Origin: Perna viridis
Taxonomy: Eukaryota
Assembly (NCBI GenBank): GCA_037379345.1
Contig: CM074511.1
Coordinates: 36,152,862 to 36,216,861 of the forward strand
Direction of reading: 5' to 3'
DNA: 64,000 nt
Each line of letters begins with the position of its first letter. Within the stretch, counting starts at the first letter, position 1. This document shows, one piece after another, positions 1 through 31,299 of the stretch. The translations under genes were made by a program, and so were the position numbers. Under the pieces are notes generated by a model, which worked only from the letters and a program-made list of their open reading frames with translations, did not search any database and had not been told where the DNA came from.

Positions 1-112
1 TGCACATTTTTAAAAATTACCCTATTTTTCCACTTGTAATTAGCATATTTTTCACATTAAACATTCATATGCATTTACAAACATTCTATTGTATATATAT
101 ATATATATATAA

Positions 113-187
113 TTTATTAATATTTCTATTTTTGTAATGAGATATTTTACAACGTTGCAAAACATATGCAGTAATATACATTTTATT
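113..187 (-). terminator. Candidate polyadenylation signals of the FREM1-like gene
   Basis: AATAAA on the minus strand at 182-187 and 113-118, downstream of the stop at 334. Common by chance in AT-rich DNA. Confidence 0.35.
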
Positions 188-333
188 TCAAAATGATATG
201 AAATTTCACATCAGTTATTCTGTCAGCACTATCTTTTGTCAGAGACATATCACCACGTTCGCTTAATATTCAGTCACAACCTTTGTTGTTCATATTTGCC
301 AATTTCTACAATGAAACTGACATAAAAACTGTT

Positions 334-602
334 TTAAAAGTTCCATGAATATCTATGTCTCCTTCTTGAACGTGATCGCTTTGTTTTAGTTGATTTGGTA
401 TTTGGAATTCCTTCACATATAAACCTTTTTGTGGTTGTATCACAGCGTTTATTTCGCCAAGTGTGATTTTTACCCACTTGTACACAGCGTTTATTAAGAT
501 TTCGCCCACTCGTGTTGGGCTGTCTAACACCCCAGTTAGCGAATTGATATGGATCATAGTTCAGATATTTCCAAACTTTAGGATTCTCTTTATTATTCAA
601 AC
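334..602 (-). CDS. FREM1: FREM1-like exon 10 (end of C-type lectin, basic tail, stop)
   Basis: GLNNKENPKVWKYLNYDPYQFANWGVRQPNTSGRNLNKRCVQVGKNHTWRNKRCDTTTKRFICE, then TKSTKTKRSRSRRRHRYSWNF and stop. Acceptor ttgtag|GT completes the WIG-L motif. Confidence 0.92.
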
Positions 603-1698
603 CTACAAATAGAATAATTATAAGTCATAAAAGATTAAAATTACTTTGATTAACTTTTATACCAATCATAAAAATTCTCCTCAGTCAAGCAATATTTCTT
701 TTCCACTAGGAAGCAAAACCCAGATTGTACAAAATTGTTAATGACTTACTAATATATTCAAAGCAAGTATTTTAGAACCGTATCTTTCTCCTGAAAGGAT
801 CCTCAATAATAGAAAATTATCAATTAAGAAATTACACGTGTATAAAGACGTGTTTGCCAGTCGAATATATGGGGCAACCATTCACATTTCCTGAATATAT
901 ACATTTTCTTCTGATTTATTGCCAGATGCAACAAATATGATATTCAAAAAGCCAGTGATTATGAATGCCAATAAGACATTTTTAATCAGTTAACTTTTTC
1001 AGGTAAATATACGTGTGCTATGAAAACTTGTGATTGAAGCTCTAGCATGTAGACATATCAATTAGAATATATTGATTTATACACCCAAAGTTATAGTGAG
1101 AAAAAAATACAAAAAATGTATATGATTATTAAGTTTTCATTCTGATTTCTGTAATAGATGGATTGCTGACTGCATTCGACACTTTCAAAATTGATGAAAT
1201 GTTTGGAATAGGAATGGAAGATTGAGGTTTAGCGCTGTAAAACCTAGATCTAACCCACCATTGCGGTACCAACTGCTCCGGGGGTGCAATATCTATTTGC
1301 CAGATTTATTTTGGACTTGACTTGATTTTGAAACGGATAAGTGTTCGTTAATTCTGTTGTAACCCTTATTTTATGACAAAACAGCGAAAGTATGAGATCA
1401 ATTTTAAAGTAGCAAAAATTAAGTCAGACGTTCTTTTCGGAACAATATTTACAGAAATTGACAACTAATCCAACTGCACTTGTACGTATTACACTAACTG
1501 TTACATAGGCTTCGTGTTGTGATAAGTAAAGAAGAAAAGGGACATAAATCTACGGTATGCAAAGAAATGATTAAGAAACAACTTTGGCCCCGATTCCTAA
1601 ACATGTATCTTACTCTTGTTAAAATGGGGATAGTTTTGGTTTGTCTTATTTTATTTCAGGTAAAAGTACAAAATAAATTGAATAAAGATCAAACTTAC

Positions 1699-1872
1699 CA
1701 ATCCAGAAAGATTTTTTATTAGACAAACTAATAAGGAAATCAAAATGTTCCTTAGATCTGACTGAAGTTATTGTGGATTTCATAGACGACAATGAAGCAC
1801 ATTTATACTGAGCAGCATTCCAAGTGAGTCTCTCGTTGACAAAGGTATAACACCTTCCTTCAAAATGGGCTC
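1699..1872 (-). CDS. FREM1: FREM1-like exon 9 (C-type lectin domain, first part; this frame is not in the ORF track)
   Basis: Acceptor tttcag|GA; AHFEGRCYTFVNERLTWNAAQYKCASLSSMKSTITSVRSKEHFDFLISLSNKKSFWIG has the CTLD CY...TW..A...C and WIG motifs (cf. FREM1 TWNAAAQAC, RKSFWIGLN). GTAAGT donor; phase 1-1. Confidence 0.92.
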
Positions 1873-2642
1873 CTGAAATATGAAAAAAATAAATGACTTT
1901 TTGTCAGTATACGTTTCAGGTTGCTCATGGTAGAAGAAGAAAAAGGTATTTCTATAAATTACCTTACATTGGCCTCTCACAACAAACAAAAATTACTCAC
2001 CTTCCCAGGTTTTTTATAGTGGGGTTCGTGCTTTGTTCGTGTGTGCATTTTGATTATTTTATGTTATACTGGTTTATCCTAGGTTGTCATTTTGATGTTG
2101 CCGGTTTAATATGTCCTCGGATTTCCACTATTTTGTACCATCGGTAATGATACTTCCACTTTTAGAAATACGATGAAATAATACTAGTATTTTGCAGTTT
2201 CAACATCGATAAAGTTAATTTATATTAACACTTTCTGACTTTAATGTATGCCAAATTACATTGTGCCATAATACTATTTGATAAGACGGGTCAACTTACA
2301 TTATCTAAAATTCTCAACATAATTTACGTTTTATCTTTCTATTGACTCTTCTTGCATAATTAAACTGTAAAAATGGCAAACGATTAAACAATAAAAATGG
2401 CACTTTATTTATTCAAACCGCTTTCTTCAAATTTATTTTAAGTATAACCTTTTCCTATTTCAAATTAAGTGCGTCTTCGTAAGAATCAGGTAAAAAAAAT
2501 AAAAATCTATCATTATGCAAATTGTTTTTTTAATTACCAAAGTTTGATTTAGATTCAGAATATAACGTATGGCAGTTTTTTTCCCCACATTTTTCGATTT
2601 ACATAGATTTTAAGTAGATAAGTCCAAAAAGTCTGGTCGAAA

Positions 2643-2880
2643 AGAGTAATCAAGAGAACCAAAATTCTAGCGGAATTTAAAAGAATGTAATCCAGGGACA
2701 AAGACCAGAAATGGGAAACAGACAAATACAACAAAGAACATAAATAACCAAATTATACATACAAAGTCACAAAAGTAAATGAGCAACTCAGACGCCACTA
2801 AAAACTGGAAGGATGGACCAGGTACACCGGTAGAGTAACTGTCTTCCTCTAGAAAGACCTGCCGAGTTGCTAATAAAAAA
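2643..2880 (+). repeat. Interspersed ~240-bp repeat family A, copy 1 (strand is relative)
   Basis: Aligns end to end with 17728-17978, and in reverse with 40503-40755 and 15750-15966 (shared ctagcggaa..aaaagaatg..atccagggacaaagacc, ccactaaaaactgg, caccggtag, gccgagttgct). Confidence 0.9.
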
Positions 2881-2954
2881 CATATATGTTTGTGTGTAAT
2901 ACTTAACATATTGCCCGATTCTTACAAAGACTTGATTTAAACACATATACTTAC

Positions 2955-3117
2955 CACTATTACATTTGTTCCCGCCTGACTGACTATCAGACTGCTCGTC
3001 AGTGCTGTCTGATGTCCACCTCTTCCAGTTTCCATCTTTTCCACAAATGTACATTTGTTGAGTAAACAAATCGAAATGTAACAGTCCTTTTGTCGTCGAA
3101 GTACACTCTTGAGGTGC
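2955..3117 (-). CDS. FREM1: FREM1-like exon 8 (Cys-containing module before the lectin domain)
   Basis: APQECTSTTKGLLHFDLFTQQMYICGKDGNWKRW, cf. FREM1 [38 protein letters not shown] donor; phases 0 and 1 fit. Confidence 0.9.
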
Positions 3118-3450
3118 CTATGGGGTTTATAAGTTTGCGTTATTTGAAAAAATGAACAGGTTTTGTACATATTTATAAATATATTTGAAAATAGCCATGA
3201 AAATGGTGACTATAAAGAAAAAATGGCACAATTTTGTTTTTCATGTTATCATTTTGAATAATACACTTGAGATTTATTGTGCATTCAAGCAGTTTTAATG
3301 TCTACTTGTTGTCGTGTAAGATCACCATTTCTCTTTGGTTATTCTTTTTTTTTTTGGTTACTTTTGCAGGTTTTTTTTCAAACTTTAGTACTGAAAAAGG
3401 ACTATGTATCGAATTCGATGTGTCAATTGAAAATATTAAGGTTTTCTTAC

Positions 3451-3702
3451 CTGAATATTTATTTTTGGTATTGGAGTCTTCTTCCTTCGTCTTTTCGTTT
3501 TCTTATTTCTCCTCCGTTTCTTTCCCTTTCTCTTCTTTTTTCTATTTTTGTTTTTCTTTCTATTGTTTCTAGTTCTTTTTCTCTTCTTGGCTTTTTCTCC
3601 AGATGTTTTATTAATGTTGCTGTCATCATTTTTCTTTCCAGGTTCTGTGTTATATGTGTTGTCGATAGGATTAGACGACTTAAACTGTGTCAAGGATGGC
3701 CG
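3451..3702 (-). CDS. FREM1: FREM1-like exon 7 (polybasic Lys/Arg linker; symmetric phase 0-0)
   Basis: Strong acceptor ttattctttattctgcag| and donor CAG|GTAAGA bracket a 252-nt open frame containing KAKKRKRTRNNRKKNKNRKKKRKGKKRRRNKKTKRRRKK. No homology support. Confidence 0.72.
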
Positions 3703-4876
3703 CTGCAGAATAAAGAATAAAAGACATCAAGAATAAATCAAGGTCTATCGGAGTAAAATCTGTGTCTAAGACGGACAACCTAAGATAATATTCCATTTCC
3801 CTTAATGATTAATTACTAGTTTATGTTTAGTCTTATCGTGAAACTAATTGTTAAAAATATGGAAATATGTTGAAGTAATATTTTGTTCAAGTTGATAGCT
3901 TGTATAGATGGATTTTCACATTTACAAGTAAATTCTGTTCTAATTGACAAGTGTCTTTGCGAAAAAAAAAATAATGGCATGTTCTTCAATCTCATAAATG
4001 TGAAATAAAATGTACTTATTTATAAATGGGCATGCTTTTGTTGCATCGTTCATGTATTCCCAAAACTATTTTGACAGGATCAGAAACCTTCACCAAAACT
4101 AACATCACACTCTTAAGCTATCATTTTTATCTGTAATTAAAGTGCCAATCTCCAGTTCAATGTTAAAGTTTTTGTAACTTTTGACGTCTTATCTCTTCCA
4201 ATTCGATTAACACCCCGCAAAGAGTGCATGTTTTTGTTTTGGCGTGCTTAAAGTTCGGCACGATTTTAACTAGGGCGTTTAAGCACTGTACACAATGTAC
4301 TGACCCCTACTCAATATTGCTGATATTTAAAATTAATTCTCAAGTGATTTTGTTTAGTCCGAAATTGCATTTCAATACAGAAGGTTTTAGTTGTTATTCT
4401 GAAATCTATTTCATATTTTCAGAAATGCTTTGAAAACTTACCTAAGTAATTCAAGAGCGTTTCTTTGCATTGCCTTTAAAGTTATCGATGCATTTTATAC
4501 GAAGATTAAGAATGGTGTTATTGTAACAAAATATGTTATGTTTTTTATTATGTGATATGCTTTGGACATATTCCAGTTTTGACTGCATCTACAGTTCATA
4601 TTCATTTAGTCAGTATTGAATGAATTTATTTTATATTAATATATGTTATTATATAGTTCATATAGTTCCTAATCAGCATTCAATGAATTTATTTCACATT
4701 TAATGTGCGTTACTATTATATATTTTCAGGTAAATCAAGTTCAAATAATATTACACTGTTGCTTTTCATAAAGACATAAATAGGCTAATTAGAAAATCGC
4801 CCAGACTTGCCAGAAACCAAAAGGATGGTATTGCTGGAAAATCGTGATAGATGAAAATAATTAGAAGCATTCTTAC

Positions 4877-4983
4877 TCCTATGACAGTGTCTGTTTTTCC
4901 TGCTCCAGGTCTGAAACCATTATCAATATCGTCTAATTCTGTTGTGTCCTTTGAAATCATGCCGATATATTGGTCACATTCTC
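4877..4983 (-). CDS. FREM1: FREM1-like exon 6 (linker after Calx-beta)
   Basis: Acceptor ctttgtcgtaatag|GA; GECDQYIGMISKDTTELDDIDNGFRPGAGKTDTVIG (KGEC, cf. FREM1 KGGQC); GTAAGA donor; phases 1 and 0 fit. Confidence 0.8.
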
Positions 4984-5380
4984 CTATTACGACAAAGGAG
5001 TGAAAGAAATGATAATTAAGTAAATGAATAATGCTTCAAGTGAAATGAATCTATATTTTTTTGCAATTTGTTTTCAATTTGTTTTATGTATGTTATACTG
5101 TAACCGCCAACTGTCATATCTAAATCATTGATGGTTATTGAATGCCAAGTTATAATTTTTAAATGAAACTCAACAATCATAGGTTTTCAAGTTTATGAAG
5201 TTAATATTTTCATTGAAACTAATTTAATGAGATTTATTTCATTATTACCTAAAACACTGAGTCTTCATGCTTTGAATTATTAATGGTAAAAACTCTGGGT
5301 GTTGGATTTGGCACCTATGTCTATATTTTGTGTTTTGAGTACTTCTTGCACACATTTTTTGTGATACATACGTTTCCTTA

Positions 5381-5424
5381 ATGCTTCTGATGAGAGGTTA
5401 CTCCTTGAAACACATGTGCAGCAT
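5381..5424 (+). ncRNA. Degenerate minimal type I hammerhead ribozyme motif
   Basis: ATGCT-T-CTGATGA-GAGG(TTACT)CCTT-GAAA-CACATGTG-C-AGCAT: both core boxes, stem II, palindromic stem III and stem I (ATGCT/AGCAT) are present; the cleavage triplet is not NUH. Confidence 0.5.
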
Positions 5425-5621
5425 ATCAAAATTTGCAATCTATTTGATTGGCATTGTTGTATTCATACTTGAATTCGAGTGGTGGAAACATCAACGGATA
5501 AGATTAAACGACCTTTTAAAGCGTAAATGTAAATCTTTGCATTCTTTATTTATAATTTAACTTGCTGTGTTAAAAACAAAATATTATATCCAAATACATG
5601 TAGTGATATATTTATGTGTAC

Positions 5622-5771
5622 CTTTTCTTGCATTTATTATTCGTACTGTAACTCGCTCATTGTTTCCCATGATTGCATTCACCGGTTCCTCTAAGACTAT
5701 TCTGAACTTTTCGTTTTCCTCTTCTATCTTATCATCAGGTATTCTTACGTCCCAAAATGCTTGTGCTTGTC
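5622..5771 (-). CDS. FREM1: FREM1-like exon 5 (Calx-beta domain, second half)
   Basis: QAQAFWDVRIPDDKIEEENEKFRIVLEEPVNAIMG has the Calx-beta DD..EE.E.F.I.L..P signature. 150 nt, phase 1-1; GTACAC donor is weak. Confidence 0.9.
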
Positions 5772-6058
5772 CTAAAACATATAAACGAGTTTTCTTTACA
5801 TTTAAGAGTTTTAATGAATATGCTGAACAAATATTCTTATTTGGCACATAGCTCTTATTATGCAATAGAAATATGTATATGTATATGGTTATATTGACAG
5901 AACTTTATTTTGCAATGAAATAACATTTAAAAGAACACTTACTGTTTTCTAACTGTTAACATGCAGTGAACCCGAATAATTGTCCATATGAATTGCTTTC
6001 TTAATAAGTGTAGCTGTTGTTTGTTTTTAAAATGACAATATTACTGTTATATTTATAC

Positions 6059-6261
6059 CTGGATTAAATTGGACTTGCTGAGCAGTACTTGGTACAAAAT
6101 CCATTCCTTCTGTAGCAGACATTTCTCTTATAGCAATTCCTACAAAAGCCATACTGTCAAGAGCACCTCTTCTCCTGAGTGCAACACTCAAGGTTCCAAC
6201 ATTCTCACAAACCACTATATCTTTCTTTGCAAACTCAACAATTGACCAGCCGAGTTCAAAT
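6059..6261 (-). CDS. FREM1: FREM1-like exon 4 (Calx-beta domain, first half)
   Basis: FELGWSIVEFAKKDIVVCENVGTLSVALRRRGALDSMAFVGI...QVQFNPG, cf. FREM1 LELKWSHIEW...VCENVG...RRG...SAFVGI...QFDPG. Phases 2 and 1 fit. Confidence 0.92.
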
Positions 6262-7058
6262 CTGTAATCAGGTAGAAAAAAGTTAAAAGAATGTTATCGA
6301 CGACCTGATTTTATATCATTTGAACAATCAGTATCATTAAACCTTTGTAGGGCGTTTGGAACGCGTTCAGTTCTTAACTTGATAATTGTTATCTTTTTAC
6401 ATGCAAACTGTCTGCACACTTTTTATATCTGGATTTGAAAAAAAAAACTAAAAGGTTAAGAATCTTAAAGAGTATAATCCCATTTGAATCATGTTTTCAT
6501 ATGATCGTGCATACTTTAAGAGCCTCTTAGTACTTTTTCGTGTCACAGGTGACTTTTCAGGTGTGTTTTGAAATCGGCTTTATTAGTCAGTTTATCGTCT
6601 CTAATCGTATCATTATGTCGACAGTATTATATATACATGCAAATAAAATGCATATTACCCACCCGTAAAACCCATTAATGCACCTATCATCGATTTGGTA
6701 TGTAGTGCGTTTCTCCAATTTGTCATGTACATTTTTACTTTCACTGCAAAGCAAAACATTGGGGTCTTCTTTTCCATACATACATTTTGGATTCAATAAA
6801 ATATATAGTTAATTTGTAAAATTGAACTTGATCAAAAAAGAGTTGCGCATCATATTGTCTTGCTATTTTCATTTTACCACGTTTGAAATTTTGTAAATCC
6901 TTATGCGTAGATCTATCTCAGCTATTTGATGTTAGATATTTTGTATACCCCTTTTTGATTCACTGTTCGGTATAGTTTTACATCTGTTCATATCCCGAAG
7001 ATTAATCTATACTTAAAGTACCATAATTAGTGTAAGAATAAGATACAAAGCCACTCAC

Positions 7059-9659
7059 TTTATTTCATCTAAGCTGTTCCCTCTGCTGTCCATGATACGG
7101 AAAATGAAGTGATCTTTGGCAATGTCCGTATTTTCATTTAAAATATACAGTAAACTATTCTCATCAAGGTCTTTTTGTGTAAATCTTCGTCTGACAAATC
7201 GTTTAGTTGCAACATTTTGAATGTGACCAAACATTGGGCGTTTGACAATGATATACATAAGTCTACTATTATCGGTATCTGAATCAACCGCCTTTAAATT
7301 TCGACTTGATAACCTGAATCCATATTTTTCCTGTCCGAAATACTCCAGCGTGTCAGGGGGACTGTTAACTATTAGTTTAGGTGCATCATTTACAGTGGGA
7401 TTTACAAATATACTACAGATAACTGGATTTGTTTGAAGTGTTTCATTCACCAAGAAACCACTGTGACGACCATCTGACACTGTAAATAAAAAGTTATCTA
7501 GTCCAGCATAAGACAACTCACTTTCATACGTAACGTACCCTAAGTCGATGTCCCTTTGTGTGAAGTTTCTGGTTTCTACAAGTCCTCCCTTGTAAATATG
7601 ACCAAATGTAGGGGGTTTGGCAATGATATATGTTATGTTCGAGCTCGGAGTATCAGGATCTTCGGCTAGAAGATTCCCTGAGTTAAGAACAATGTCACTT
7701 CCCTGAGAAACTTCAATGAGATTATTTTTACGTAATGATGGCAAAACTCGATCTAGTGGTTCAATTTTAATATTGAATACTCCATCTTTAGCTTGACTAA
7801 GGCCGTTTGTTACCGTAAATGAAAATGAATCCTTAGTATTATCGCCTTTCGACAAATGGTTGTAAACAACTTTCTGAGCAGCAATATCAAGTTGAGAAAA
7901 GCTCGTTATGCTGACAAGAGGCTTATAAATGTTTTCAATCTGTCCATGTTTTGGTGGTTGAGTAATAGCGAATACTATTTCCTCAGGCTTAGTAGATTCA
8001 TCAGAAGCATTTAGGTCTGAAGAAGTTATTGATGTCCTTTCTCCTTCTCTTACTTCTATTCCTTTGTTTAGTAAAGCTAGGTTAGCCTTTCTTGAGTTTC
8101 TTATTCTAATTTCAAATGTTTCAATATGCCTTTTGTTTCTTCCATCAGACAAGAGAAAACGGAAATTATCAGTTTCTGAATTTCCCATACGTTTTGTGTG
8201 AACATAACGAATTCGATTCATATCTATATCATATTGTGTAAAATTTGATCCAACACGTAAATCTGAACAAGCAGAAACCCTTGACGGTATGTAAGGATCT
8301 GAACAAAATTGTAGAGATCCCTTCTTGGGAGTTGATGTCAGTATGTAATACACTTCATTTTGACTGTTGTCTGGGTCTGTTGATTGCAAAACAACGCTAG
8401 AAATCATAGCATAGTCTCCATATTCTAACTGAAGACCTGCATTTTTTGTGATTTCTGGTCGTTCGTCGTTTACGGGATTAACAGTGATGTTACACAGTCT
8501 TTTCACTTCATGTCTACCATCCGATACAGTGACGGCAAATTTGTCATGGAAATTCTCGGTATTGTCATGTTTATACTTCAACCTGAGACCAGAGTGTAGC
8601 TCATCTGAATTAAATTCTTCAATAGCAGCCTCAACATCGCCATTTCGCGTTCTAATCATAGCAACAATGTTTCCATGTTCTGGGGGTTGTGAAATGGCAA
8701 AGTTCAGTTTATCTTTGGGCATGTCCATATCTACTGCATCAATCATTGATTTGTCCATCATCATGCTTTCACCTTCATTTAGACTAAAATCATGAAGCAT
8801 AACAGTAGGCTCTTCATCATTCTGAGGTAGAATTCTTATACCAAAGTTTTTGATTGATGACCTATGGTTTCCATCAGTCGCATAGACTTCCATGTCATCA
8901 TAAACTGGTTCGACTCCTTTATGGGTCGCTTGAACAAAATTTACTGAGTTATCAATTATATCTTGCAACCGGAAAGTTGTTATTCGTTTCCCTTTGTTGG
9001 ATTTCTCCGACCCCGGACTTGGTTTTATATTCTCAATGAAACCCCACTGAGGTTGCCTCACGACTATGAACTGGATTTCGTCCGGGTCAGTGTCAGGGTC
9101 TTTCGCAGTAATGATGTCAGGTGTTAAAGTAATTGTACCACCCTCTTTTACTGAGACTTCCCTTCCAGTTATGATTGTAGGCTTCGAGTTATCAATTGGT
9201 GTTATAGTAATATTCAAATCATACACTGGTAGGTCTGCAGTTGCAAGATAATTCTGATCAGAAACAATGAAAGTCACGCTGTCCTTCATTATAGCTGTTC
9301 CAATTTCCCCTGCAGTGTGTATATATTTGACAAGTTTATCTTTGACATTCTGTTGTGTAAACTTGGTTGCTGGTCTGTTATTTAACTGCATTACTCCATG
9401 CTTAGGCTGTTTTATTATCAGAAAAACGAGATTTTTGTCGTCGGTATCTACGTCTGTTGCTGACAGCACCGCTGAAGTTATAAAAGCCTCGGAGCCTTCG
9501 GACACAATGAGACGGGGGCGGAGGTTTTTGCCAAGTTGGGGGGTTTCGTCATCGAGTGGAACAATATTGACAGACATCACCCTTGTTGCTTGGTTAATAC
9601 CGTCAGATAATGTTAGAGTAAACGTATCCAAGATAACATCAGATCCATCGTTCACATAC
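7059..9659 (-). CDS. FREM1: FREM1-like exon 3 (2601 nt; remaining CSPG repeats)
   Basis: Acceptor ttgtag|G completes the Arg codon (R-YVNDGSDVILD, cf. FREM1 RYQHDGTEVLQD). Motifs YIHTAGEIG, PVYDLNITI, GSEKSN and FTQKDL; GTGAGT donor, phase 2. Confidence 0.95.
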
Positions 9660-9698
9660 CTACAACATGGAATTCATGAAGTCATTTGCAAATATTAA

Positions 9699-10100
9699 GA
9701 AGCTGTCCACGTAAAAATTAAGCCGATCATATGATATGAGTGGCACAGTGTAAATTTTATCCTACTGATTTGTTTCCAAATGTAATATATATATATATCA
9801 TAATTCATCTATGTCAAATAGATTAAAGTTTGTTCTAAATCGACAATGGATTGCTCAAAAGTTGATCTTAAAATTCCCTAACAAAGAAACCAAATTTTGC
9901 TCAAATTAAAGAGTTATCTCCCTATTTTCAATGAATTTCAATGCTTTCTATGCATTTTATTTCTATTTAATTGTTGAAAAAAAAAAATCAAAAACCAGCT
10001 TTCAACTTCGAGCAAAGATACATTTTAATATGAAATGTATTTTTTTAAAATAAAATTTATCATGTGTCATTCACTGCCTGGTTTTTTCATGGATTCCCTC
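9699..10100. mobile_element. Second, more degenerate copy of the Sola3-like MITE
   Basis: TTAA|GAAGCTGTCCACG...CATGGATTCCCTC, collinear with 30926-31299 (atgatatg.gtggcac, cgacaatgga, gag.tatctcc, ttcaactt.gag). Confidence 0.65.
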
Positions 10101-12426
10101 ATCAGAATATTATGATTATTTTATTTCACTAGATTGGGAAATTACAGTATAAAACTACTGATATTAGATATGAATTGTAATATTCATATCTTTGTACTAC
10201 TTGTGCTTGATTACTTTTAACAACAACTACAACAAAAATACACTTTTTTTTAAATATTGATAAAAATCAATTAGAAGTTAAAAAAAAAGACAAATTGCTG
10301 ACCTAATTATCCAATTACATGGTTGTTTATTTTAACATTTAACAATGTCGATAATATTTGTCAATATAAATATTCTGTCATTAGATTCGTAGACAAAATA
10401 AATTCTGATTCTATCATGATTGTGCATGTCTTGATCATGAATCATTAAGTACTTAGATTAGTCACATCATCCTCTCGTCCATCCAACTTTCTTCTGTTTG
10501 TTTGATTAATAAAATACAGGCAAAGTGAAATAGATAAAGCTTATATTACACAATAAAAAAAACGAGTCAGTTTGAGTCTACTTATTACACATTCTATGTA
10601 ATACTGTGCCCGTTCTGATATTTTATTGCATGTTTCCTCTCGTTTATTAAGTTTTTATGCTTTATCATCATGATGACATAATAAATAAACAAGGAACATA
10701 GTATCATTAATTCCTACCAAATATTTCAGAAAAAACATAGCTTATGAAATCTGAGAGGCGAATATGAAAGTGTATTAATTTAAAGTGTATTAATTTTCAA
10801 ACATATTAAAGTTAAAATGGACCAGCCTAGTAATTCAAATCTTTGTTAACGTAAAATGTATTTTTTTCTGCAAGTATCTTTTTATATCAGTTTGTTCAAT
10901 ATTTTCGTTAAAGCGTTTGGAGCAGTTATGTTGTTTATTATAACTCTCATAGATGTTTTCACTGATAATAAAGGTTGTCGATTTTTGTTCATTTTGTTTA
11001 CAAATGATCATATAAATCAGAACTTGGTGAGAAGACAAATTACTTTCGAATCGAAAATATGTCATGATATATTTTCTTTTCATTAGATTAAGTCCGATTT
11101 ACAAATGGCTTTGAACACAGTGCAATTATTAATGATTATAAAATACGACCTTTACTCATGGAATAGTTTGTTTTCCCGGAGAATTATATTTGCACCAATT
11201 TACTACAATGCTATTAATATCGGTTTCCTTTGTAGTTTGAATGGATCTATAAAACAGTATGTGAAAATAGAATTTGGTTTTAAAATTCATATGCCACGTT
11301 TCGGTGCTATTGAAAGTTTGTCTTTGGAATTAATGTTGTGAAATATAACATCAACCATTGATTTCGTAATTGCATTGCCGGAGAAAAAGAGTTTGGCTTC
11401 CACAAAAAATAGAAACATCAAACGAGATATAATATTTGTGTTCATTAAAAACAGAGCCTACTTCAAAGATTTTTCCATTGGTCAGGAATAGTCATTAAAT
11501 ATAATTTCTTGTAATTTTCTCTTGACTTTGTCTGGGGTAGCTCTGTAAAACCTCAGAACTCCTTTCAGCAAACACAAAATGATTTCATAAGTCTTCATAT
11601 TGATTACTTTCTAATGAAGAGAATTTCTACAAAAAGGAGGATGATTAAAGCTTGTAATATTTTTCTTAGATAACCATTACTTTAATTAGTTGTGATTACG
11701 AGAGCGATTATGTGTGAAATAGCACAGAAACTTAAAACATATTCCAAGCATTTTTGTGCGTTCTTTTCTTCACAAATTATTCTAACTACAACACAGATAG
11801 AACAAGAATGTTGATTAACGCCATGATTTTTACAATGATCTTTTCAGACATCAGTTTAGATGATGTGTGCTTATGGACCAATGAATGTTGGATTAAAAAA
11901 AAAACAAAACAAAAAGGCATAGTGCCTTGTCGTATCGATAATGCATTAAAGAAATAAGGACATTTTTAAAGTGCTTACATTTTCTCAAACATATTTGCAT
12001 CCTATCATTTCAATTTCAGATAACGTAGCTTACTAAGTAGAAACTGTAAAATTTCTATACATTCAACCAAAAGACTGCACAAAATAAAACTTTAAAAATA
12101 TTCGTTTTTCATTGGAGTTTTGTCACGTAAATGCCTTGTTGCAGTTGATGTTGATGTTTTTTCAAAGTTCTTTTCCGAATGATAATAAGCACATTTTACT
12201 GAATTTGTTTTACATCACAAAAACGTCTCGTCACAAAATGCGGTGGGTGTTCTAAAGTGATCAATCTGTTCGTCCGTCTGTAACAAATTGTGCGCAGTCT
12301 GGAACATTTATATCATTCAAAATAAGTATTTGATATTAAGCACAATTGTTGACAACCCAAAAACGACGGTAAACGACATTCTGGCATTTAACATAACGTC
12401 AAATGTTACTGTTTTTGTTTTGTTTT

Positions 12427-12458
<32 letters not shown>

Positions 12459-12858
12459 TTTTTGTGGGGGGGGGTATTTTTTTCCTTTTCCCCCCTTTTG
12501 TGTGACAAACTGTGTCCGGGTTGTAACGTTTTTCCCTTTACGACAATATATTGAAATTTGATACCAGGTTTACCATTAGACTGTCTTGAAACAAATTCAC
12601 CAGCATTTATTTATGGCGGGTGCACATTGATGGATTTCGTCTTATGATATCTAGTTTATTTTAATTGCAATTTGTGGGTGTGTTAGATTTTGTTGGCATT
12701 TTAATTTCGTTCATGTTGGTATTGTATTCCTGTTGTTCCAATTACTTTTTTGTCAAAGTGTATTTATAACTAAGCACTTCGCAAAGTACCAAATTAATAC
12801 TGCTGTTTTTCTTACTAATTGCTCATTGATAATGGCTGAATATCTATTACTAACTCAC

Positions 12859-15080
12859 CTGATTCGTTTCTTTTTCAGGTCCTTTAAATTGAATTTACCC
12901 CCAGTAGTCATGACGTCACCAGCTTTCTGTAGGACACCAAATGACGGGGTTGCTTCTACGATGAAAAAGAGTTCTGTTGGTTTAGTGTCTACATCTGTAG
13001 CAGAAAGTTGATCTGTAGTTATTCCTAAGATGCCACCTTCCTCGACTAGTAGTTTTGAGGTAACGAATGTTGGGGCCTTGTCATTAACTGGTTGTACATC
13101 AATATCAAAATATTGACCGAGAACCCGATTGCCGCTGGCGTCTTGTACGGTATAGACAAACCTGACAAGTCTACCAGATGACCCAATGTCCGTCAATGGT
13201 GGCATGTAAGCAATTTTCATATGGTTGATATCTTCTTGCTTAAAAGTACGTATTTCTTTGAGTGACGGGTCTTTTGATACCATTGACATATTGTGTGTTG
13301 CAATGAGACGCCCAGCATCTTCATGTCCCCTGTTTGCAACAAAATATGGTGGTGCAGTTATTATGTATGTTAGTTGGTTATCGTCGGATTCTTTATCAGT
13401 ATATTGAAGTTCTGCTTTTGTTATGTAAGCAAGGTCATTCTCTAATACGTGCATTAGGCGAGTAGCGTCAGGTGACAACTCTGGGGGGTTTTCATTAACT
13501 TGGTGAATAATAATGTTAAATGTTTCGACATTTGATTTATTAGGTGGATCGTGTTGATCTCTGATACGAAATTGGAACGAGTCCACGAACATCTCTCGCC
13601 CAAAATGACGGTAGTATATTGCACCTCGTTCAATATCACGCTGTGAGAATCTAGTTACTCTAGTCCCAGTTTCTGCTCTACGAAGCCGACGTATTATTTC
13701 TCCAGCCTCAGGTGGATGAACAATTACGAATATGATATTGCTATCAACGGTGTCGATGTCATGAGCTTTTAATATATCTGTGTTGAATTTTTTCAAACCA
13801 CCCTTGTTTAACTCTAAGCCTAAATTATTAACTACATATGGCGCTGTGTCGTCTTTTGGTATTATTGTAATTGGAAAATTTGTAAGAACTGTATTGACAC
13901 CGTCACTAATTCTTATATCAATCCGATCTTTAGTAGTTTCGCTATCATCATGTACATAAACTACAGATCTTCGTTGTAAATCCTCGACTGAAAAGTAAAG
14001 AGAGGGTTTGCTGTTTACTTCTATGCGTCCATGAAAAAGTCCACCGGTGACATACAGGCGAACTTTGTTGACGTTGTCTCTATCGACAATTCTTAAATTA
14101 TCTTGAGTAATCGGTCGCGACTGTCCTTCGAGAATTACCAAACCGCTATTTCTAGACACTCTTGGCGCTGTCGTTGCAGAAGATCGAACAGCTATATGCA
14201 AATATATTTCCTGGCTATGTGCAAAATGACTATCAAATACGGTAAAGCCAACTTTGTAAATTCTTTGCTCAAGATAGCTGATGGCGGGTGGTTGGTATGC
14301 TATTCGTTCATTCTCTATGTCAGTTTGTTGAAAAGAAGTGATGGGTGTCGTGTGGTCGTCCAAATTCACGAAATAACCCCCGTTTTCTCCTGGTGGGTGG
14401 CTTATGTTATAAACGAGCCGAGAGTTGGGTGTTTCATAATCTTCTGCAAAAATAACTCCTGGAATTATTGAAGACAGAACAAATTGATCTACATCCATCA
14501 TGTATATGCTACGATGAGAAGACGTCGGAGGAAAATTTGGCTGAACATCTTTGATATATATTGGTAAAAAGAAATTTTCAACAGTCGGTTCATGTGTTGT
14601 TTTAGAATCAGAAAGTTCGATTTTCAGAGGAATGTAATCGACATCAGGGCTATGAGATTTAAGATGCTGGTAATGAATTTGCGATAACAAAAACTCATGA
14701 CATGACTTTTTGAAATTATCTACAGCTTCTAGAGAATCTGCAATGATTAGGTTGCCAGCAAGTGGCCAAACTGTTCGATGACGTGAAAATGATACGGTAC
14801 ATGACGCATTTTGATGATTCCTCAGATTAAACGATAATACCTTTGAATCTATTATATTTGAAACAGCTTTAGCTTCTGGCACAACAACAGACCTAAGTCC
14901 TCTAGTCCGTACTAAGTCATGAGTAGAATTCACAATTCGAACAGTGACGTAAAAGTTTTCTATTTCGGTAGAGTATTTTGTAAATCTAAATGCACGAAAT
15001 TTGATTTGGTCTTCTGTTAATAATGGTGACCCACTATGAAAATACTGTACTGTCAAAGGTGGAAAGTTGCAATCGAATAC
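12859..15080 (-). CDS. FREM1: FREM1-like exon 2 (2222 nt; rest of NV domain and first CSPG repeats)
   Basis: Acceptor ttttttacag|GTA TTC GAT TGC (VFDCNF, cf. FREM1 VFDCHF). Motifs DVDQFVLS, APRVSRNSGLVILEGQSRPIT, IYYRHFGREMFVDSFQF and MKIAYMPPLTDIG are collinear with FREM1. GTGAGT donor, phase 2. Confidence 0.95.
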
Positions 15081-15749
15081 CTGTAAAAAAAATCTGTTTA
15101 GATGAATTAAAATATACAACAATTTTCAAATGGTCAATGCTAAAGTATAAACCCTTTCGACTTGACTCAATGAGCATGCGTGATATATACTTTCGTGAAT
15201 TAGGGCTTGGGTAGAACAAACGATGGGTGTACTGAGTCGGCTATACGCATACTCATCGACTGCCCACCATATATATGGCTACAGCAATCAAATGATAAAT
15301 CTTATTGAATCGTAGTTTTCCTTTAGCAAGAACTATAAAAAGTATAGACAGTGAATAACTATTAAGTGATATGGTTCATGTATCAATAAATATTAGGCCT
15401 GATTAAAAATATGACCAATTATAGAAATGTTTACTATTAATGACTTGTGTTTGACTGAACATTAATGGAAGTTTATCGGCGATTTTGACCTCTTGGGATC
15501 CAGTTTTTATAAGACAATTACTTTTACAATTTACCAGTAGCAACCCCTGGATAGTCTCTTATTGCTACACAGTAATTAACCATTTACATCTTTCATGTAA
15601 CAGTATGATTCAAAAGAGTTGAAGGCTTACAGATCAATATTAAGTCGAACAATTATTATTCTGATCCCGTAGACATGTCCTATGGGGTAAAGATTGACTG
15701 TGTATCAGTTTGATACTTCATTCTGGGTATTTCAGTACTCGATGACATC

Positions 15750-15966
15750 CCTAGAAAAGCAGAGGATGCTTCACCTACCGTTGCACCTGGTCCGTACTCC
15801 CTGTTAGTTGAGTCCGGGTTGCCCATTTATTTTTGTTTCTTCGAAGGTGTTATTTTATTTATTTCTTGTATTTTGTTGTGTGTGTCTATTTTCCTTGTCT
15901 AGTATTTATCCTTGGAATATTTTTCTTTTGATTTCCGCTCGAATCTTGGTTCCTTTAACGACTCTT
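15750..15966 (-). repeat. Repeat family A, copy 2 (more diverged)
   Basis: ctagaaaagcagaggatgct...gcacctggtcc...cttttgatttccgctcgaatcttggttcc matches the 40.5-kb copy. Confidence 0.85.
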
Positions 15967-17727
15967 GCAAAACATAGTGCATTTTGCTTTCAATATGCTT
16001 TGCGATATTTTACACATTGCAATATATTATTATCAACTTGATCAAAGGACTACTGGCATTTATGCAATCCAATTCATACTAATACAACAAAATTAGTTTC
16101 TGCTATCTCCTTCTATGATATTTTATTGCCAAGAAGAAGAATTCAGTAGTTAAACCCGTTCTATTACTGTGTGGTATCTAACACAAGGTTTATATCACCT
16201 TAATCTTACGTCAGATTGAATATTTACCGATGCATTGAGATGACGTATGTATTTTAAACGACTGAACTGATACATAGAGGAGGCGTTTAATCACTTGGTC
16301 AAGATTGATTAGGTTTCGCGAAGTCATTTTGAGAAAAAAAAAGTAGTTTGAATATGGCAAGATATTATTGGCATATTTCTTATGAAAGTTCTATACTCTT
16401 ATTTGAAAATAAATTATATTAAAGAAAATACTGTTTTGTTAATAAGTGGGCACGTCGAGGTTTATTAGAACAATAACATCTTGACTGTTTGCTTCAATGG
16501 AGAGTTTTTGCTAACATTTTAACGTAACTTTCAACACGTCGTTTATCATATTGAGAAACAAATGATAGGATAATCTTGGATGTTCAAATATATCATAAAA
16601 ATGCTTAGACAGAAGGAACATCAACACAATGCAGATTAAACTATTCAAGATCCTTTCAGAGACTGACAGCAGCTTCTCAACGCAGTTGTCAAAGAGCAAA
16701 AAGAGTTCACTCAAACGTTAAATGAAGCAGAGAAAAACATTGTGTTTATTTTACAACTGTCAATATACGTAAATGAAAGGATATAGAGAATGCAAAGATA
16801 ACAATGAATTCCTCTCCGGGATTCTGACAGGGAAAAATTAATTGAACACAAGATGAAGACACGTAAGAAACCATATACCTGTTAATTAACGCCAGAAAAG
16901 AAGAAGTATCAAAGAAGACATGAAACTTTGACAAAGAAGTTAATGTAGCATTCATTCATTAAACAGCTTTTCCAGACAAATTTCTAGCTATTGAACATTG
17001 AAGTTGTTACATCTTAAGGCAAAAATCTAAGTTATGGTATATTGAAGCAGAACTAATAGCATCTTCATTATCAAAGAGAAAAAGTGAAAAACTAGTATGT
17101 GCTCATTAGAGCTTAATTTTAAAAATTAATTGGTGATGACTTATTTATAACGTAGCCTTAAATGATGTGAAAGTACAAGTATGCTTTTAGCTTTTAATTT
17201 GCTCACAGAACGATGATGAAGTAATCTTTTTATAGGAGTCTACATTGATAACTTCATTGATTTCAATTCATAATATGGGCGCATACAAGAAGCAAAATTT
17301 TTTGCTTTTATTGCACTTGTTATAATCTTATTACATATAATAAAGAATAGAAATCTCCTGCGCAGAGGGTATATTCGTCATTTCATATGTATTGAGTCAA
17401 GAAGTGGCTATGGGTCTGCGGAGGAGACAGGAAAAAATACATGTAGTGTTAAGTTACGACATATAAAAAAAAAAAAAAAAACTACAAATATAAAAAAATA
17501 AAATCTACTCTTCATATATGTACGTGTATAACTCGTATTACAGCTTGCGCAATTTTGTCCTTTATAGATCTAATTGAACTATCCAATCAACTTCTACACC
17601 ATTTGAACATTTCAAAATGTAGTAAACTTGTTAATTTCTTCTGACTTCATGTAATAATTAAAATTTGAAATACCTACAGATTAAGTCTTCAGATTCAGAA
17701 CTGGACACAATGTAGTAATATCTACAT

Positions 17728-25300: not shown

Positions 25301-25389
25301 CCTGCTCCTGGTATTCAAACCAACCAGCATTTAGTGTTTTTGCAATCGTTCCTGGTGTCTTGATACTAAATGGAACACAAGAATCTTGT

Positions 25390-25712
25390 CAACGTTTTAA
25401 ACATGTAATACTAAAAACTAAATGAAAAATAAATATCGAAAAAAGAAAACCGAAGCATGAAAATGGGTCAAAATCCAAATACATGGCCAGAACATGAAAA
25501 CATGAAACAAAGACAATCGATACATGCAATGTAGCAAACCGAATAAAATAGATTACATTAAAAAAAACAACCTGAAGATAAGGCAAAACAAGACGTAAAA
25601 CAAAAAACTGCAAAACTACAGTAGTATTAACTCCTACAAAAAAACCTTGGTGACATCAGGTGCCTCGGAAGGGTCAGCATGTCCTGCTCCGCCAGCAGCA
25701 CCCGTCATACTG
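25390..25712 (+). repeat. Diverged relative of family A (similar fragments at about 1995-2130, 24570-24772 and 46872-47060)
   Basis: A-rich arm followed by the core tcaggtgcctcggaagggtcagcatgtcctgctcc...gcacccgtc, related to the family A core. Confidence 0.6.
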
Positions 25713-30925: not shown

Positions 30926-31299
30926 GAGGCTGTCCATGTTAAAATCAGTCAAATTCTATGATATGGGTGGCACCACATATTTTTTTTCAACTGAATTTTT
31001 AGTTTCAAAGTAATATTTGTATCATACAAGGTAAATATGTAAAAGATTGTTTTAAGCGACAATGGATGATCAGAAAATGATTTTAAAGTTCCTTAACAAA
31101 GCAAACAATTTTTGCAAAATTACGAGCTATCTCCTTATTTCAATAAATGTCAATACTTCCTGTGTAATTTATTTCTCTTTAATCCTAAACAAACATTCAA
31201 CTTTGAGAAAATATGCATTTCTTATATGCTATAGATGATTTTTTTAAAACAAAATTTCTCACGTGCCACCCTCTGCCTTGTTTTTGCATGGACACACTC
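30926..31299. mobile_element. Sola3-like non-autonomous DNA transposon (MITE)
   Basis: Termini GAGGCTGTCCATG...CATGGACACACTC flanked on both sides by TTAA (30922-30925 and 31300-31303). GAG...CTC ends with a TTAA TSD are the Sola3 signature. A homologous copy lies at 9699-10100. Confidence 0.7.

What the first reader, a model, noticed from the sequence alone, without database searches (positions are those of the whole stretch)
3451..3702. Skippable polybasic exon in FREM1-like gene: candidate matrix-retention switch
Seen: a 252-nt phase 0-0 exon with strong splice sites between Calx-beta and the lectin encodes 30 K/R in 39 residues (3478-3594) with no acidic residue; skipping it keeps the frame. 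Known: VEGF-A and PDGF-A use alternatively spliced basic exons as heparan-sulfate retention motifs, and vertebrate FREM1 has an RGD-containing linker here (recalled). Inference: the exon could tether the protein to sulfated glycans or acidic shell or basement-membrane matrix, offer many dibasic sites that release the lectin, or yield a cationic peptide. Such a basic run may also slow ribosomes. This is the best candidate for an undescribed mechanism in the window.
Basis: partly seen in the sequence, partly recalled or inferred. Interest (0 to 1): 0.75.

Follow-up and report, generated by a model that had tools for sequence, protein, structure and literature searches.

The report
Conserved polybasic linker exon of mussel FREM1
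This is a real exon, included in every transcript examined, of a mussel FREM1-like matrix gene; its lysine/arginine-rich linker is shared by molluscs, annelids and nemerteans and probably binds acidic sugars rather than acting as a splicing switch.

Summary
Window 3702..3451 (minus strand) is a 252-nt, phase 0-0 exon with AG/GT borders. It encodes 84 residues, with 30 K/R and no D/E in 39 residues at 3594..3478. It lies between the Calx-beta exons and the C-type lectin exons of a FREM1-like gene.

Spliced contigs from 4 of 4 runs, from 4 studies, include the exon with exactly the predicted joints. No 4877-to-3117 skipping joint was listed.

The basic run is not peculiar to this gene. All 68 of 68 held spiralian FREM1-like proteins with the upstream anchor carry 13-27 K/R per 39 residues at the same place. 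Their first ~1800 residues reach only 9-11. Mytilus edulis aligns to the whole exon at 61.5% identity. Deuterostome orthologues reach only 5-13, and the four vertebrate-type sequences printed carry RGDVP in this linker instead.

No model or transcript lacking the basic block was found in Mytilus, oysters or scallops. A nemertean isoform pair does differ by a 361-residue polybasic-rich segment.

Best reading: a disordered basic linker that is always included and whose charge, not sequence, is conserved. It probably binds sulfated glycans; that function is inferred. The "skippable switch" idea is not supported here.

The parts
3451..3702 (-). 252-nt phase 0-0 coding exon (84 aa): the linker exon of the FREM1-like gene
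   Evidence: AG/GT borders, open frame, and joints 4877|3702 and 3451|3117 in one long spliced contig in each of 4 of 4 runs. Single copy in the genome. 61.5% identical over all 84 residues to Mytilus edulis P0232 residues 1836-1921.
3478..3594 (-). Polybasic run: 39 residues with 18 K, 12 R and no D/E; 105 of 117 nt are purines
   Evidence: Shuffles: no D/E in 0.079%, >=30 K/R in 0.01%. The homologous position in 68 of 68 held spiralian proteins has 13-27 K/R per 39 residues.
3640..3672 (-). Short conserved motif NPIDNTYNTEP upstream of the basic run
   Evidence: It aligns with NPFDNTYNTDP / NPLDNAYNTDP in Pinctada, Saccostrea, scallops, unionids and Logan venerid-like proteins and with NPIDNTYNTEP in Mytilus P0232 and P0231. 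In Biomphalaria the 40 aa holding the FDNTYLNTE form of the motif are what distinguishes isoform X1 from X2.
4877..4983 (-). Upstream exon (107 nt) encoding ECDQYIGMISKD...; it ends in phase 0
   Evidence: Joints 5621/2|4982/3 and 4877|3702; translation. The anchor CPQYxGMISK is conserved in molluscs and Owenia.
2955..3117 (-). Downstream exon (163 nt) encoding APQECTSTTKGLLHFD...YICGKDGNWKRW, a Cys motif that precedes the lectin
   Evidence: Joints; translation. Conserved from molluscs to frog (KKCTPGLKGLLHFD in P0012).
1699..1872 (-). First C-type lectin exon (174 nt)
   Evidence: Joints; translation; blastp to orthologue lectin domains.
334..602 (-). Last coding exon: the end of the C-type lectin domain, a second basic tail (KSTKTKRSRSRRRHRYSWNF) and the stop codon at 334-336
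   Evidence: Pfam Lectin_C, E 3.4e-05. Basic C-terminal tails are also present in 15 of the 16 mollusc orthologues printed (not Potamilus) and absent in Owenia.
5622..5771 (-). Calx-beta exon (second half)
   Evidence: Pfam Calx-beta, E 0.0013 and below the curated cut-off on this piece alone; joints.
6059..6215 (-). Calx-beta exon (first half). The upstream border was not determined here; the contigs run to at least 6250.
   Evidence: Pfam Calx-beta, 28.8 bits against a cut-off of 27; joint 5770/1|6058/9.
7055..9655 (-). Large CSPG-repeat exon (ORF limits, not exact exon borders)
   Evidence: Pfam Cadherin_3, E 1.5e-129, 7 stretches. 86.7% identical to Mytilus edulis FREM1-like P0232.
12855..15122 (-). 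Frem_N plus CSPG-repeat exon (ORF limits)
   Evidence: Pfam Frem_N, E 4e-19, and Cadherin_3, E 1.8e-69.

Best explanation
The exon is included in every transcript contig examined. It belongs to the FREM1 orthologue (FRAS1-related extracellular matrix protein 1) of a mytilid mussel. It encodes the core of a disordered linker between the Calx-beta domain and the pre-lectin Cys motif plus C-type lectin. The linker has a short conserved motif (NPIDNTYNTEP) followed by a run of lysines and arginines. A basic run at this position is ancestral to molluscs and is shared with annelid and nemertean orthologues. Its sequence, length and K:R ratio drift freely, while its positive charge and position are kept. 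The most likely mechanism (inferred, not shown) is electrostatic. The basic run, together with a second basic tail after the lectin, would hold the lectin end of the protein on sulfated glycosaminoglycans or other polyanions of the basement-membrane matrix. That is a fixed retention or anchoring element, not one regulated by splicing. The purine-rich coding sequence and strong splice sites fit constant inclusion. Shown: the exon, its borders, its inclusion, and conservation of charge. Inferred: disorder, polyanion binding and matrix retention. The confidence given (0.6) is for the whole statement including the inferred polyanion-binding role; for the shown parts alone (real, included, conserved basic linker exon of a FREM1 orthologue) it would be about 0.9.
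For: Exon borders and frame. Gene identity: Pfam Frem_N, Cadherin_3, Calx-beta and Lectin_C; the 866-aa exon is 86.7% identical to Mytilus edulis 'FRAS1-related extracellular matrix protein 1-like'. Inclusion: each of 4 of 4 runs from 4 studies gives one long contig with joints 4877|3702 and 3451|3117, and no skipping joint was listed. Conservation: all 17 mollusc and Owenia linkers printed have 14-26 K/R per 39 aa. 68 of 68 held proteins with the spiralian anchor have 13-27, against 9-11 anywhere in their upstream ~1800 aa. Lottia, Patella, Biomphalaria and Lineus have 20-23. Among the 150 best FRAS/FREM-family representatives, only 4 have any window with >=16 K/R per 39, and 3 of those 4 are at this linker. 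Charge rather than motif is what is conserved: the cuttlefish-type run has 20 K and 0 R, others are R-rich, and R-X-K/R-R counts range from 0 to 3. Only the NPxDNTYNTDP motif and the last residues (..IQ) align across orders. Composition fits disorder: 8 of 84 residues are hydrophobic. A functional precedent for K/R-rich matrix retention is the PDGF-A long isoform (abstract of PMC3072383, seen in the listing).
Against: No binding, localisation or proteomic data exist here, so polyanion binding is inference from composition. Low-complexity basic runs can persist partly through mutational bias, since these are purine-rich tracts in an AT-rich genome (105 of 117 nt purines; GC about 0.31). The frame-specific absence of D/E argues against pure drift. 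The sequences counted are not phylogenetically independent; many are near-identical isoforms or congeners. Constant inclusion rests on assembled contigs, which drop rare variants and give no levels or tissues. The run kind 'RNA' was a guess by the tool, although the GT-AG joints show spliced molecules. Annotated isoforms in other species do vary within this linker, so regulation by splicing somewhere in the clade cannot be dismissed.
Confidence: 0.6

Rival explanations
1. Cassette-exon switch. The exon is alternatively skipped in some tissue or stage, giving a matrix-bound isoform and a more diffusible one, as with the long and short forms of PDGF-A or VEGF-A.
For: Skipping keeps the frame. 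The linker is a site of annotated isoform variation in other animals. Lineus longissimus X1 and X2 differ by a 361-aa segment rich in polybasic clusters. Biomphalaria glabrata X2 lacks the 40 aa that hold the conserved motif. Crassostrea angulata X2 lacks 31 aa of the pre-lectin motif. Haliotis isoforms differ by 5 aa and amphioxus isoforms by 16 aa. Contigs cannot exclude a rare isoform.
Against: In 4 of 4 runs from 4 studies only the inclusion joints were listed, at a 5% threshold. None of the 9 named Mytilus models of 5 species, the 5 Logan transcripts of the nearest cluster (P0231), or the oyster and scallop sequences lacks the basic block. The strong acceptor tract and CAG|GTAAGA donor, plus a purine-rich body, are typical of constitutive exons; the link between purine-rich sequence and splicing enhancement is from established knowledge and is recalled. 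Three of the 5 neighbouring internal exons are also multiples of three. Even the Lineus short isoform keeps a 23/39 basic window.
Confidence: 0.1
2. Processing region. The many dibasic sites are cut by proprotein convertases to release the C-terminal lectin (or a cationic peptide) from the CSPG/Calx-beta body.
For: There are 22 overlapping dibasic pairs in the exon. Several orthologues contain 1-3 R-X-K/R-R motifs (Mya, Babylonia, Aplysia, Dreissena and others). The protein is secreted by family analogy (inference).
Against: The exon itself has 0 R-X-K/R-R motifs, although shuffles of the same 39 residues give a mean of 2.43 (P of 0 = 0.046). Twelve of the 25 basic blocks tested have none (the window's exon and 11 orthologues), and the cuttlefish-type run contains no arginine at all. 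No cleavage motif is therefore conserved. No proteomic evidence was available.
Confidence: 0.12
3. Neutral low-complexity spacer. The run is an expanded purine-rich tract tolerated in a flexible linker and has no specific function beyond spacing.
For: The sequence is not alignable across orders except at its edges. Linker length (Ec to Ee anchors) varies from 113 to 156 aa among molluscs, the run's K/R density from 13 to 27 per 39 among the spiralian proteins held, and the run is 90% purine.
Against: The position and the positive charge are kept in bivalves, gastropods, a cephalopod-type protein, an annelid and two nemerteans. The reading frame excludes D/E, although the other frames of the same DNA encode many E. 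No comparable window exists in the other ~1800 residues of any orthologue.
Confidence: 0.15

Closest known systems
Vertebrate FREM1 (QBRICK) and its short isoform TILRR
   Same: The domain order is the same: Frem_N, CSPG repeats, Calx-beta, a linker, a Cys motif (..C..TKGLLHFD..), and a C-type lectin. Passages of PMC8346017 read describe human FREM1 this way. PMC10140915 (passage read) already notes that bivalve and chordate FRAS1-related proteins share a domain structure.
   Different: In vertebrates the linker between Calx-beta and the lectin carries an RGD (RGDVP in P0012, P0016, P0019 and P0024; aa 1907-1909 in human) and a glycosaminoglycan attachment site. It reaches at most 7-10 K/R per 39 aa. 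The mussel and other spiralian linkers have no RGD in the exon and instead carry a polybasic run. The charge logic is therefore inverted: the spiralian linker looks like it binds a polyanion rather than bearing one.
K/R-rich matrix-retention tails of PDGF-A (long isoform) and VEGF-A
   Same: A short lysine/arginine-rich stretch encoded by its own exon in a secreted protein. [quoted passage not shown] The VEGF-A part is recalled.
   Different: Those exons are alternatively spliced and lie at the C-terminus of small growth factors. Here the exon is internal to a ~2100-residue matrix protein and was included in every transcript contig examined. No heparin binding has been measured.
FREM1-like proteins of other Spiralia (Mytilus, Crassostrea, Pinctada, scallops, Aplysia, Haliotis, Owenia, Tubulanus, Lineus)
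   Same: Orthologous position, the NPxDNTYNTDP motif in bivalves, a basic run of 13-27 K/R per 39 aa, and (in most molluscs) a second basic tail after the lectin.
   Different: The window's run is the densest seen, at 30/39 against a maximum of 27/39 in Mytilus californianus P0326. Its spacer to the exon's end is the shortest. Nemertean and annelid linkers are 2-3 times longer and have several basic clusters separated by acidic stretches.

Membership tests
FREM1 (FRAS1-related extracellular matrix protein 1) orthologue | N-terminal Frem_N (NV) domain | tested here: met
   PF19309 Frem_N, E 4e-19 and 69.6 bits (cut-off 27), in ORF 12855-15122. It is one of only 2 Frem_N loci found in the genome.
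FREM1 (FRAS1-related extracellular matrix protein 1) orthologue | Array of CSPG (Cadherin_3) repeats | tested here: met
   PF16184 with 7 stretches in 7055-9655 and 5 in 12855-15122. The total of 12 was not checked against intervening exons.
FREM1 (FRAS1-related extracellular matrix protein 1) orthologue | A single Calx-beta followed by a C-terminal C-type lectin domain (the lectin distinguishes FREM1 from FREM2, FREM3 and FRAS1) | tested here: met
   Calx-beta, 28.8 bits, in 6027-6215; Lectin_C, 25 bits (cut-off 22.6), in 334-600. All are joined in one spliced contig per run.
FREM1 (FRAS1-related extracellular matrix protein 1) orthologue | Best matches are proteins named FREM1 by their sources | tested here: met
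   Mytilus edulis XP_071131154.1 at 86.7% on the big exon. Saccostrea, Pinctada and Ylistrum at about 65%, Lingula at 42%, and frog FREM1 in the same hit list.
FREM1 (FRAS1-related extracellular matrix protein 1) orthologue | RGD integrin-binding motif in the linker between Calx-beta and the lectin (a vertebrate feature) | tested here: not met
   There is no RGD in the 84-aa exon or in the two flanking exon peptides. RGDVP is present in P0012, P0016, P0019 and P0024. This is a difference within the family, not a bar to orthology.
Alternatively spliced basic retention exon (PDGF-A / VEGF-A type) | An exon that encodes a K/R-rich stretch | tested here: met
   30 K/R in 39 residues.
Alternatively spliced basic retention exon (PDGF-A / VEGF-A type) | Both inclusion and skipping isoforms are expressed | tested here: not met
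   Only inclusion joints in 4 of 4 runs. No exon-less relative in Mytilus, oysters or scallops. The limit is that contigs can hide rare isoforms.
Alternatively spliced basic retention exon (PDGF-A / VEGF-A type) | Binding to heparan sulfate or retention in the matrix | not testable with these tools
   Needs heparin-affinity or localisation experiments.
Proprotein-convertase processing linker | A conserved R-X-K/R-R cleavage consensus | tested here: not met
   0 motifs in the exon. 12 of the 25 basic blocks tested have none (the window's exon and 11 orthologues), and the cuttlefish-type run has no R.

The most novel reading that the evidence does not exclude
Spiralian FREM1 orthologues have inverted the charge logic of the FREM1 C-terminal linker. 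Vertebrate FREM1/TILRR carries a glycosaminoglycan chain and an RGD there. Molluscs, annelids and nemerteans carry instead a conserved-by-charge polybasic glycosaminoglycan-binding clamp: the linker run plus the basic tail that flanks the lectin. In some lineages (the Lineus X1 and X2 isoforms) the amount of basic linker may be tuned by alternative splicing. This would be a different, undescribed way of anchoring the Fraser-complex protein to basement membranes.
Probability: 0.3. Interest if true: 0.5.

Novelty: new variant of a known kind. Interest (0 to 1): 0.3.

Why it matters
FREM1 is a basement-membrane protein whose loss causes developmental defects in vertebrates. Its invertebrate orthologues are almost unstudied, and one 2012 analysis even concluded that invertebrates lack FREM1 (PMC4009816, passages read, based on fly, Ciona and worm).

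If spiralian FREM1 proteins carry a conserved polybasic linker where vertebrates have an RGD and a glycosaminoglycan attachment site, there is a concrete, testable hypothesis: the lectin end of the protein is tethered to the matrix in a different way in a large part of the animal kingdom.

For the scan itself, the main value is corrective. The exon is ordinary in that it was included in every transcript contig examined and is conserved. It is not a species-specific splicing switch.

Tried and rejected
1. **Intronic low-complexity DNA rather than an exon.** Rejected: spliced contigs in 4 of 4 runs contain it with the exact GT-AG joints.

2. **Repeat or transposon origin.** Rejected: the 252 nt are single-copy in the 723-Mb genome. 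The tool skips simple repeats, so this is a lower bound.

3. **A possible alternative transcript.** Table 5c suggested a contig joining 3550 and 6052 with 29 other letters between, seen in 3 runs. Rejected: the 29 letters are absent from the window and occur once elsewhere, at G000:C6 near 17.30 Mb. That contig therefore belongs to another locus that cross-matches the purine-rich run.

4. **Avoidance of furin sites as a conserved signal.** The exon has 0 motifs against 2.43 expected (P = 0.046). Orthologues show no consistent trend, so I make no claim.

5. **Poly(A)-track ribosome stalling.** The longest A run is 6 and the richest 12-nt window has 10 A. The threshold I recall (about 11 of 12) is not reached. 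Not testable here.

6. **Shell-matrix binding.** Judged unlikely, because Aplysia, a cuttlefish-type protein, nemerteans and an annelid share the feature.

7. **Rfam scan of window 1-16000.** No family reached the gathering score.

8. **Earlier findings of the scan.** Nothing by place or by words.

9. **Literature.** 'FREM1' + 'polybasic' gave 0 papers. 'FREM1' + 'mollusc' gave 3 irrelevant papers. 'FRAS1-related extracellular matrix' + 'oyster' gave 3 papers, of which I read one passage each from PMC10140915 and PMC12607631. Supplementary files were not opened. The supplements of the bivalve C-type-lectin paper might list this gene family, but they would not bear on the linker.

10. **Steps not done.**
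Exon peptides were translated and compared one by one.
   - Structure prediction was not run, because a single low-complexity sequence would give no usable model.
Full report
**1. What is in the sequence**

The gene runs on the minus strand. One search shows a pyrimidine-rich acceptor (ttttattctttattctgcag) ending at 3703. It is followed by an open 252-nt stretch, 3702..3451, and a CAG|gtaaga donor at 3450.

One search translates the stretch as 84 codons with no stop.

The run is 105/117 purines, but purine richness alone does not explain the charge:
- In 100,000 shuffles of the 117 nt, 0.079% lacked D/E and 0.01% reached 30 K/R.
- None did both without a stop.
- The two other sense frames encode many E or stops.

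**2. The gene**

Pfam finds these domains:
- Frem_N plus Cadherin_3 (CSPG repeats) in ORF 12855-15122.
- Seven Cadherin_3 stretches in ORF 7055-9655.
- Calx-beta in 6027-6215 and 5584-5865.
- Lectin_C in 334-600.

This is the FREM1 architecture. The genome (723 Mb, 46 contigs) has only two Frem_N loci, and the exon is single-copy.

**3. Is the exon expressed, and is it skipped?**

The look-up of sequencing runs listed 20 holders in 7 studies. Runs holding about half of the words of 2900-9700 fit spliced RNA, although the tool only guessed 'RNA?'.

I laid four runs from four studies (X1, X18, X5, X6) on window 251-6250. Each run gave one long contig (3.9-8.6 kb) with the same six GT-AG joints. 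Read with the GT-AG rule, they define these exons:
- ..6059
- 5771-5622
- 4983-4877
- 3702-3451
- 3117-2955
- 1872-1699
- 602-334

The exon is therefore real, its borders are as predicted, and it is included in 4 of 4 runs. No 4877-to-3117 joint was listed at a 5% threshold.

Caveats: these are assembled contigs.

A contig joining 3550 and 6052 through 29 foreign letters (table 5c) belongs to another locus on contig C6. It is a cross-match to the purine run, not an isoform.

**4. Relatives**

Single-exon queries cannot reach full-length proteins in the word search because of its length limit. I therefore first ran the exhaustive phmmer search with the 866-aa exon. It gave 3499 hits at E <= 0.001, of which the best 150 were listed.

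Names came from the listing of cluster members: Dreissena, Lingula, Ptychodera, Tubulanus, Owenia, Branchiostoma and dendrobatid frogs, all called FRAS1-related extracellular matrix protein 1 or unnamed.

Two word searches seeded with full-length ids followed (Dreissena P0151, residues 1700-2200; Saccostrea P0185, residues 815-1677). They added:
- Bivalves: Mya, Mercenaria, Mactra, Potamilus, Pinctada, Saccostrea, Crassostrea, Mytilus, Tegillarca and scallops.
- Gastropods: Haliotis, Lottia, Patella, Batillaria, Babylonia, Aplysia, Biomphalaria and Physella.
- Others: Lineus and unnamed Logan transcripts.

It is about 65% identical to oyster, pearl oyster and scallop. The window therefore comes from a mytilid mussel other than Mytilus. 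This is an inference; no tool named the organism.

**5. The basic run is conserved**

Between the anchors CPQYxGMISK (the window's exon 4983-4877) and APQxCTxxTKGL (exon 3117-2955), every one of the 16 mollusc proteins and Owenia printed has a K/R-rich window of 14-26 per 39 residues.

A wider tally covered the held proteins that have the anchor and at least 150 residues after it. All 68 of 68 have 13-27 K/R per 39, against a maximum of 9-11 anywhere in their upstream ~1800 residues. These 68 include many near-identical isoforms and congeners, so they are not independent.

Proteins missed by the anchor pattern were checked separately: Lottia 20, Patella 20, Biomphalaria 22, Lineus 23.

As a family-wide control, only 4 of the 150 best FRAS/FREM representatives have any window with >=16 K/R per 39. 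Three of those are at this linker (Dreissena, Tubulanus, Owenia).

Deuterostome orthologues are much weaker:

| Orthologue | Max K/R per 39 |
|---|---|
| Ptychodera | 5 |
| Amphiura | 7 |
| Saccoglossus | 8 |
| Frogs | 8-10 |
| Shark | 9 |
| Clavelina | 12 |
| Antedon | 13 |

. Lingula, a brachiopod, is intermediate at 11.

The whole exon aligns to Mytilus edulis residues 1836-1921 at 61.5% identity. Across bivalve orders only three things align: the motif NP(F/I/L)DN(T/A)YNTDP, the basic block, and the last residues (..IQ before APQ).

The K:R ratio is free. The cuttlefish-type run has 20 K and 0 R, while Aplysia has 12 R and 10 K. What is conserved is position and positive charge.

A second basic tail follows the lectin in the window (KSTKTKRSRSRRRHRYSWNF) and in 15 of the 16 mollusc orthologues printed, Potamilus being the exception.

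**6. Isoforms in relatives**

I compared cluster members of different lengths.

No sequence lacking the basic block was found among:
- 9 named Mytilus models from 5 species. The 21-aa differences are N-terminal.
- 5 Logan transcripts of the P0231 cluster.
- The Saccostrea, scallop, Mya and Aplysia sequences, and the cuttlefish-type transcripts.

The linker is nevertheless a site of annotated variation:
- Crassostrea angulata X2 lacks 31 aa of the pre-lectin Cys motif.
- Biomphalaria glabrata X2 lacks the 40 aa that hold the FDNTYLNTE motif but keeps the basic run.
- Haliotis isoforms differ by 5 aa, and amphioxus isoforms by 16 aa.
- Lineus longissimus X1 has an extra 361 aa rich in polybasic clusters.

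These are database models whose RNA support I could not check. For the 625-member Crassostrea cluster only 40 members were read and 15 listed.

**7. Mechanism**

The exon peptide has 8 hydrophobic residues in 84, one N-glycosylation sequon and 36 K/R. It is almost certainly disordered (inference from composition).

The best-supported reading is a fixed electrostatic tether. A basic linker and a basic C-terminal tail flank the lectin and would bind sulfated glycosaminoglycans or other matrix polyanions.

The precedent for K/R-rich matrix retention is the PDGF-A long isoform (abstract of PMC3072383 in the listing). VEGF-A is recalled.

In human FREM1 the same linker carries an RGD at 1907-1909 and a glycosaminoglycan attachment site (passages of PMC8346017). 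RGDVP is visible in P0012, P0016, P0019 and P0024. The spiralian linker may therefore bind what the vertebrate linker bears.

A convertase-processing role lacks a conserved motif. The exon has 0 R-X-K/R-R motifs (shuffle mean 2.43, P = 0.046), 12 of the 25 basic blocks tested have none (the window's exon and 11 orthologues), and one run has no arginine.

A shell-matrix role is unlikely given the feature's presence in nemerteans, an annelid, Aplysia and a cuttlefish-type protein.

Ribosome slowing was not testable; the A content is below the poly(A)-track level I recall.

**8. What is known**

- Bivalve FRAS1-related proteins with chordate-like domain structure have been noted (PMC10140915, one passage).
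- A 2012 paper concluded that invertebrates lack FREM1, based on fly, Ciona and worm (PMC4009816, passages). The present hits contradict that as a generalisation.
- No paper in the held library combines 'FREM1' and 'polybasic'.
- I did not open supplements.

**9. Verdict**

- The 'skippable switch' interpretation is not supported in this species or its nearest relatives.
- The matrix-retention idea remains plausible, but as a fixed, ancient feature of spiralian FREM1 rather than a new mechanism of this window.
- The finding is of modest interest as a lineage-wide variant of a known protein.

Noticed in passing
window 2677-2752 (intron between exons 3117-2955 and 1872-1699): A segment of about 70 nt has summed contig depth of 24,000-32,500 in all four runs, with many loose ends on both sides at 2677-2680 and 2744-2752. 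It is probably a dispersed repeat embedded in many transcripts. No Rfam family matched. The sequence was read.
   Followed up: partly
window 3526-3550 and 6052; G000:C6:17299990-17300018 (L004): In 3 of 4 runs a contig matches the purine run up to 3550 and a short piece at 6052, with 29 foreign letters between (table 5c). The 29 letters map once to another contig of the genome. An unrelated transcript therefore shares the purine-rich low-complexity sequence.
   Followed up: partly
window 558 and 4907: Coding-exon differences between runs: A>T at 558 in X18, X5 and X6 but not X1, and A>G at 4907 in X1 only (table 3). They are probably polymorphisms between individuals or populations.
   Followed up: no
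P0230 vs P0347/P0354; P0238 vs P0359; P0246 vs P0362; P0366 vs P0365; P0013 vs P0154: The linker between Calx-beta and the lectin is a recurrent site of annotated isoform differences. Crassostrea angulata X2 lacks 31 aa of the pre-lectin Cys motif. Biomphalaria X2 lacks 40 aa holding the FDNTYLNTE motif. Lineus X1 has 361 extra aa with several polybasic clusters. Haliotis isoforms differ by 5 aa and amphioxus isoforms by 16 aa.
   Followed up: partly
window 337-396 and the C-termini of P0171-P0185: A second basic tail follows the lectin domain in the window. In many molluscs the protein ends in a GFFFG-like motif (e.g. ..GFFFGN..GFFYGA). Mytilid and oyster proteins end differently (..RYSWNF..RFRWSN).
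   Followed up: no
PMC4009816 (2012): [quoted passage not shown] The present searches find FREM1-architecture proteins in molluscs, annelid, nemerteans, brachiopod, hemichordates, echinoderms, amphioxus and a tunicate, Clavelina.
   Followed up: partly
G000:C10:35560142-35560741 (L002): The only other Frem_N locus in the genome lies in a 1675-aa open frame and is presumably the FRAS1/FREM2-type partner gene.
   Followed up: no
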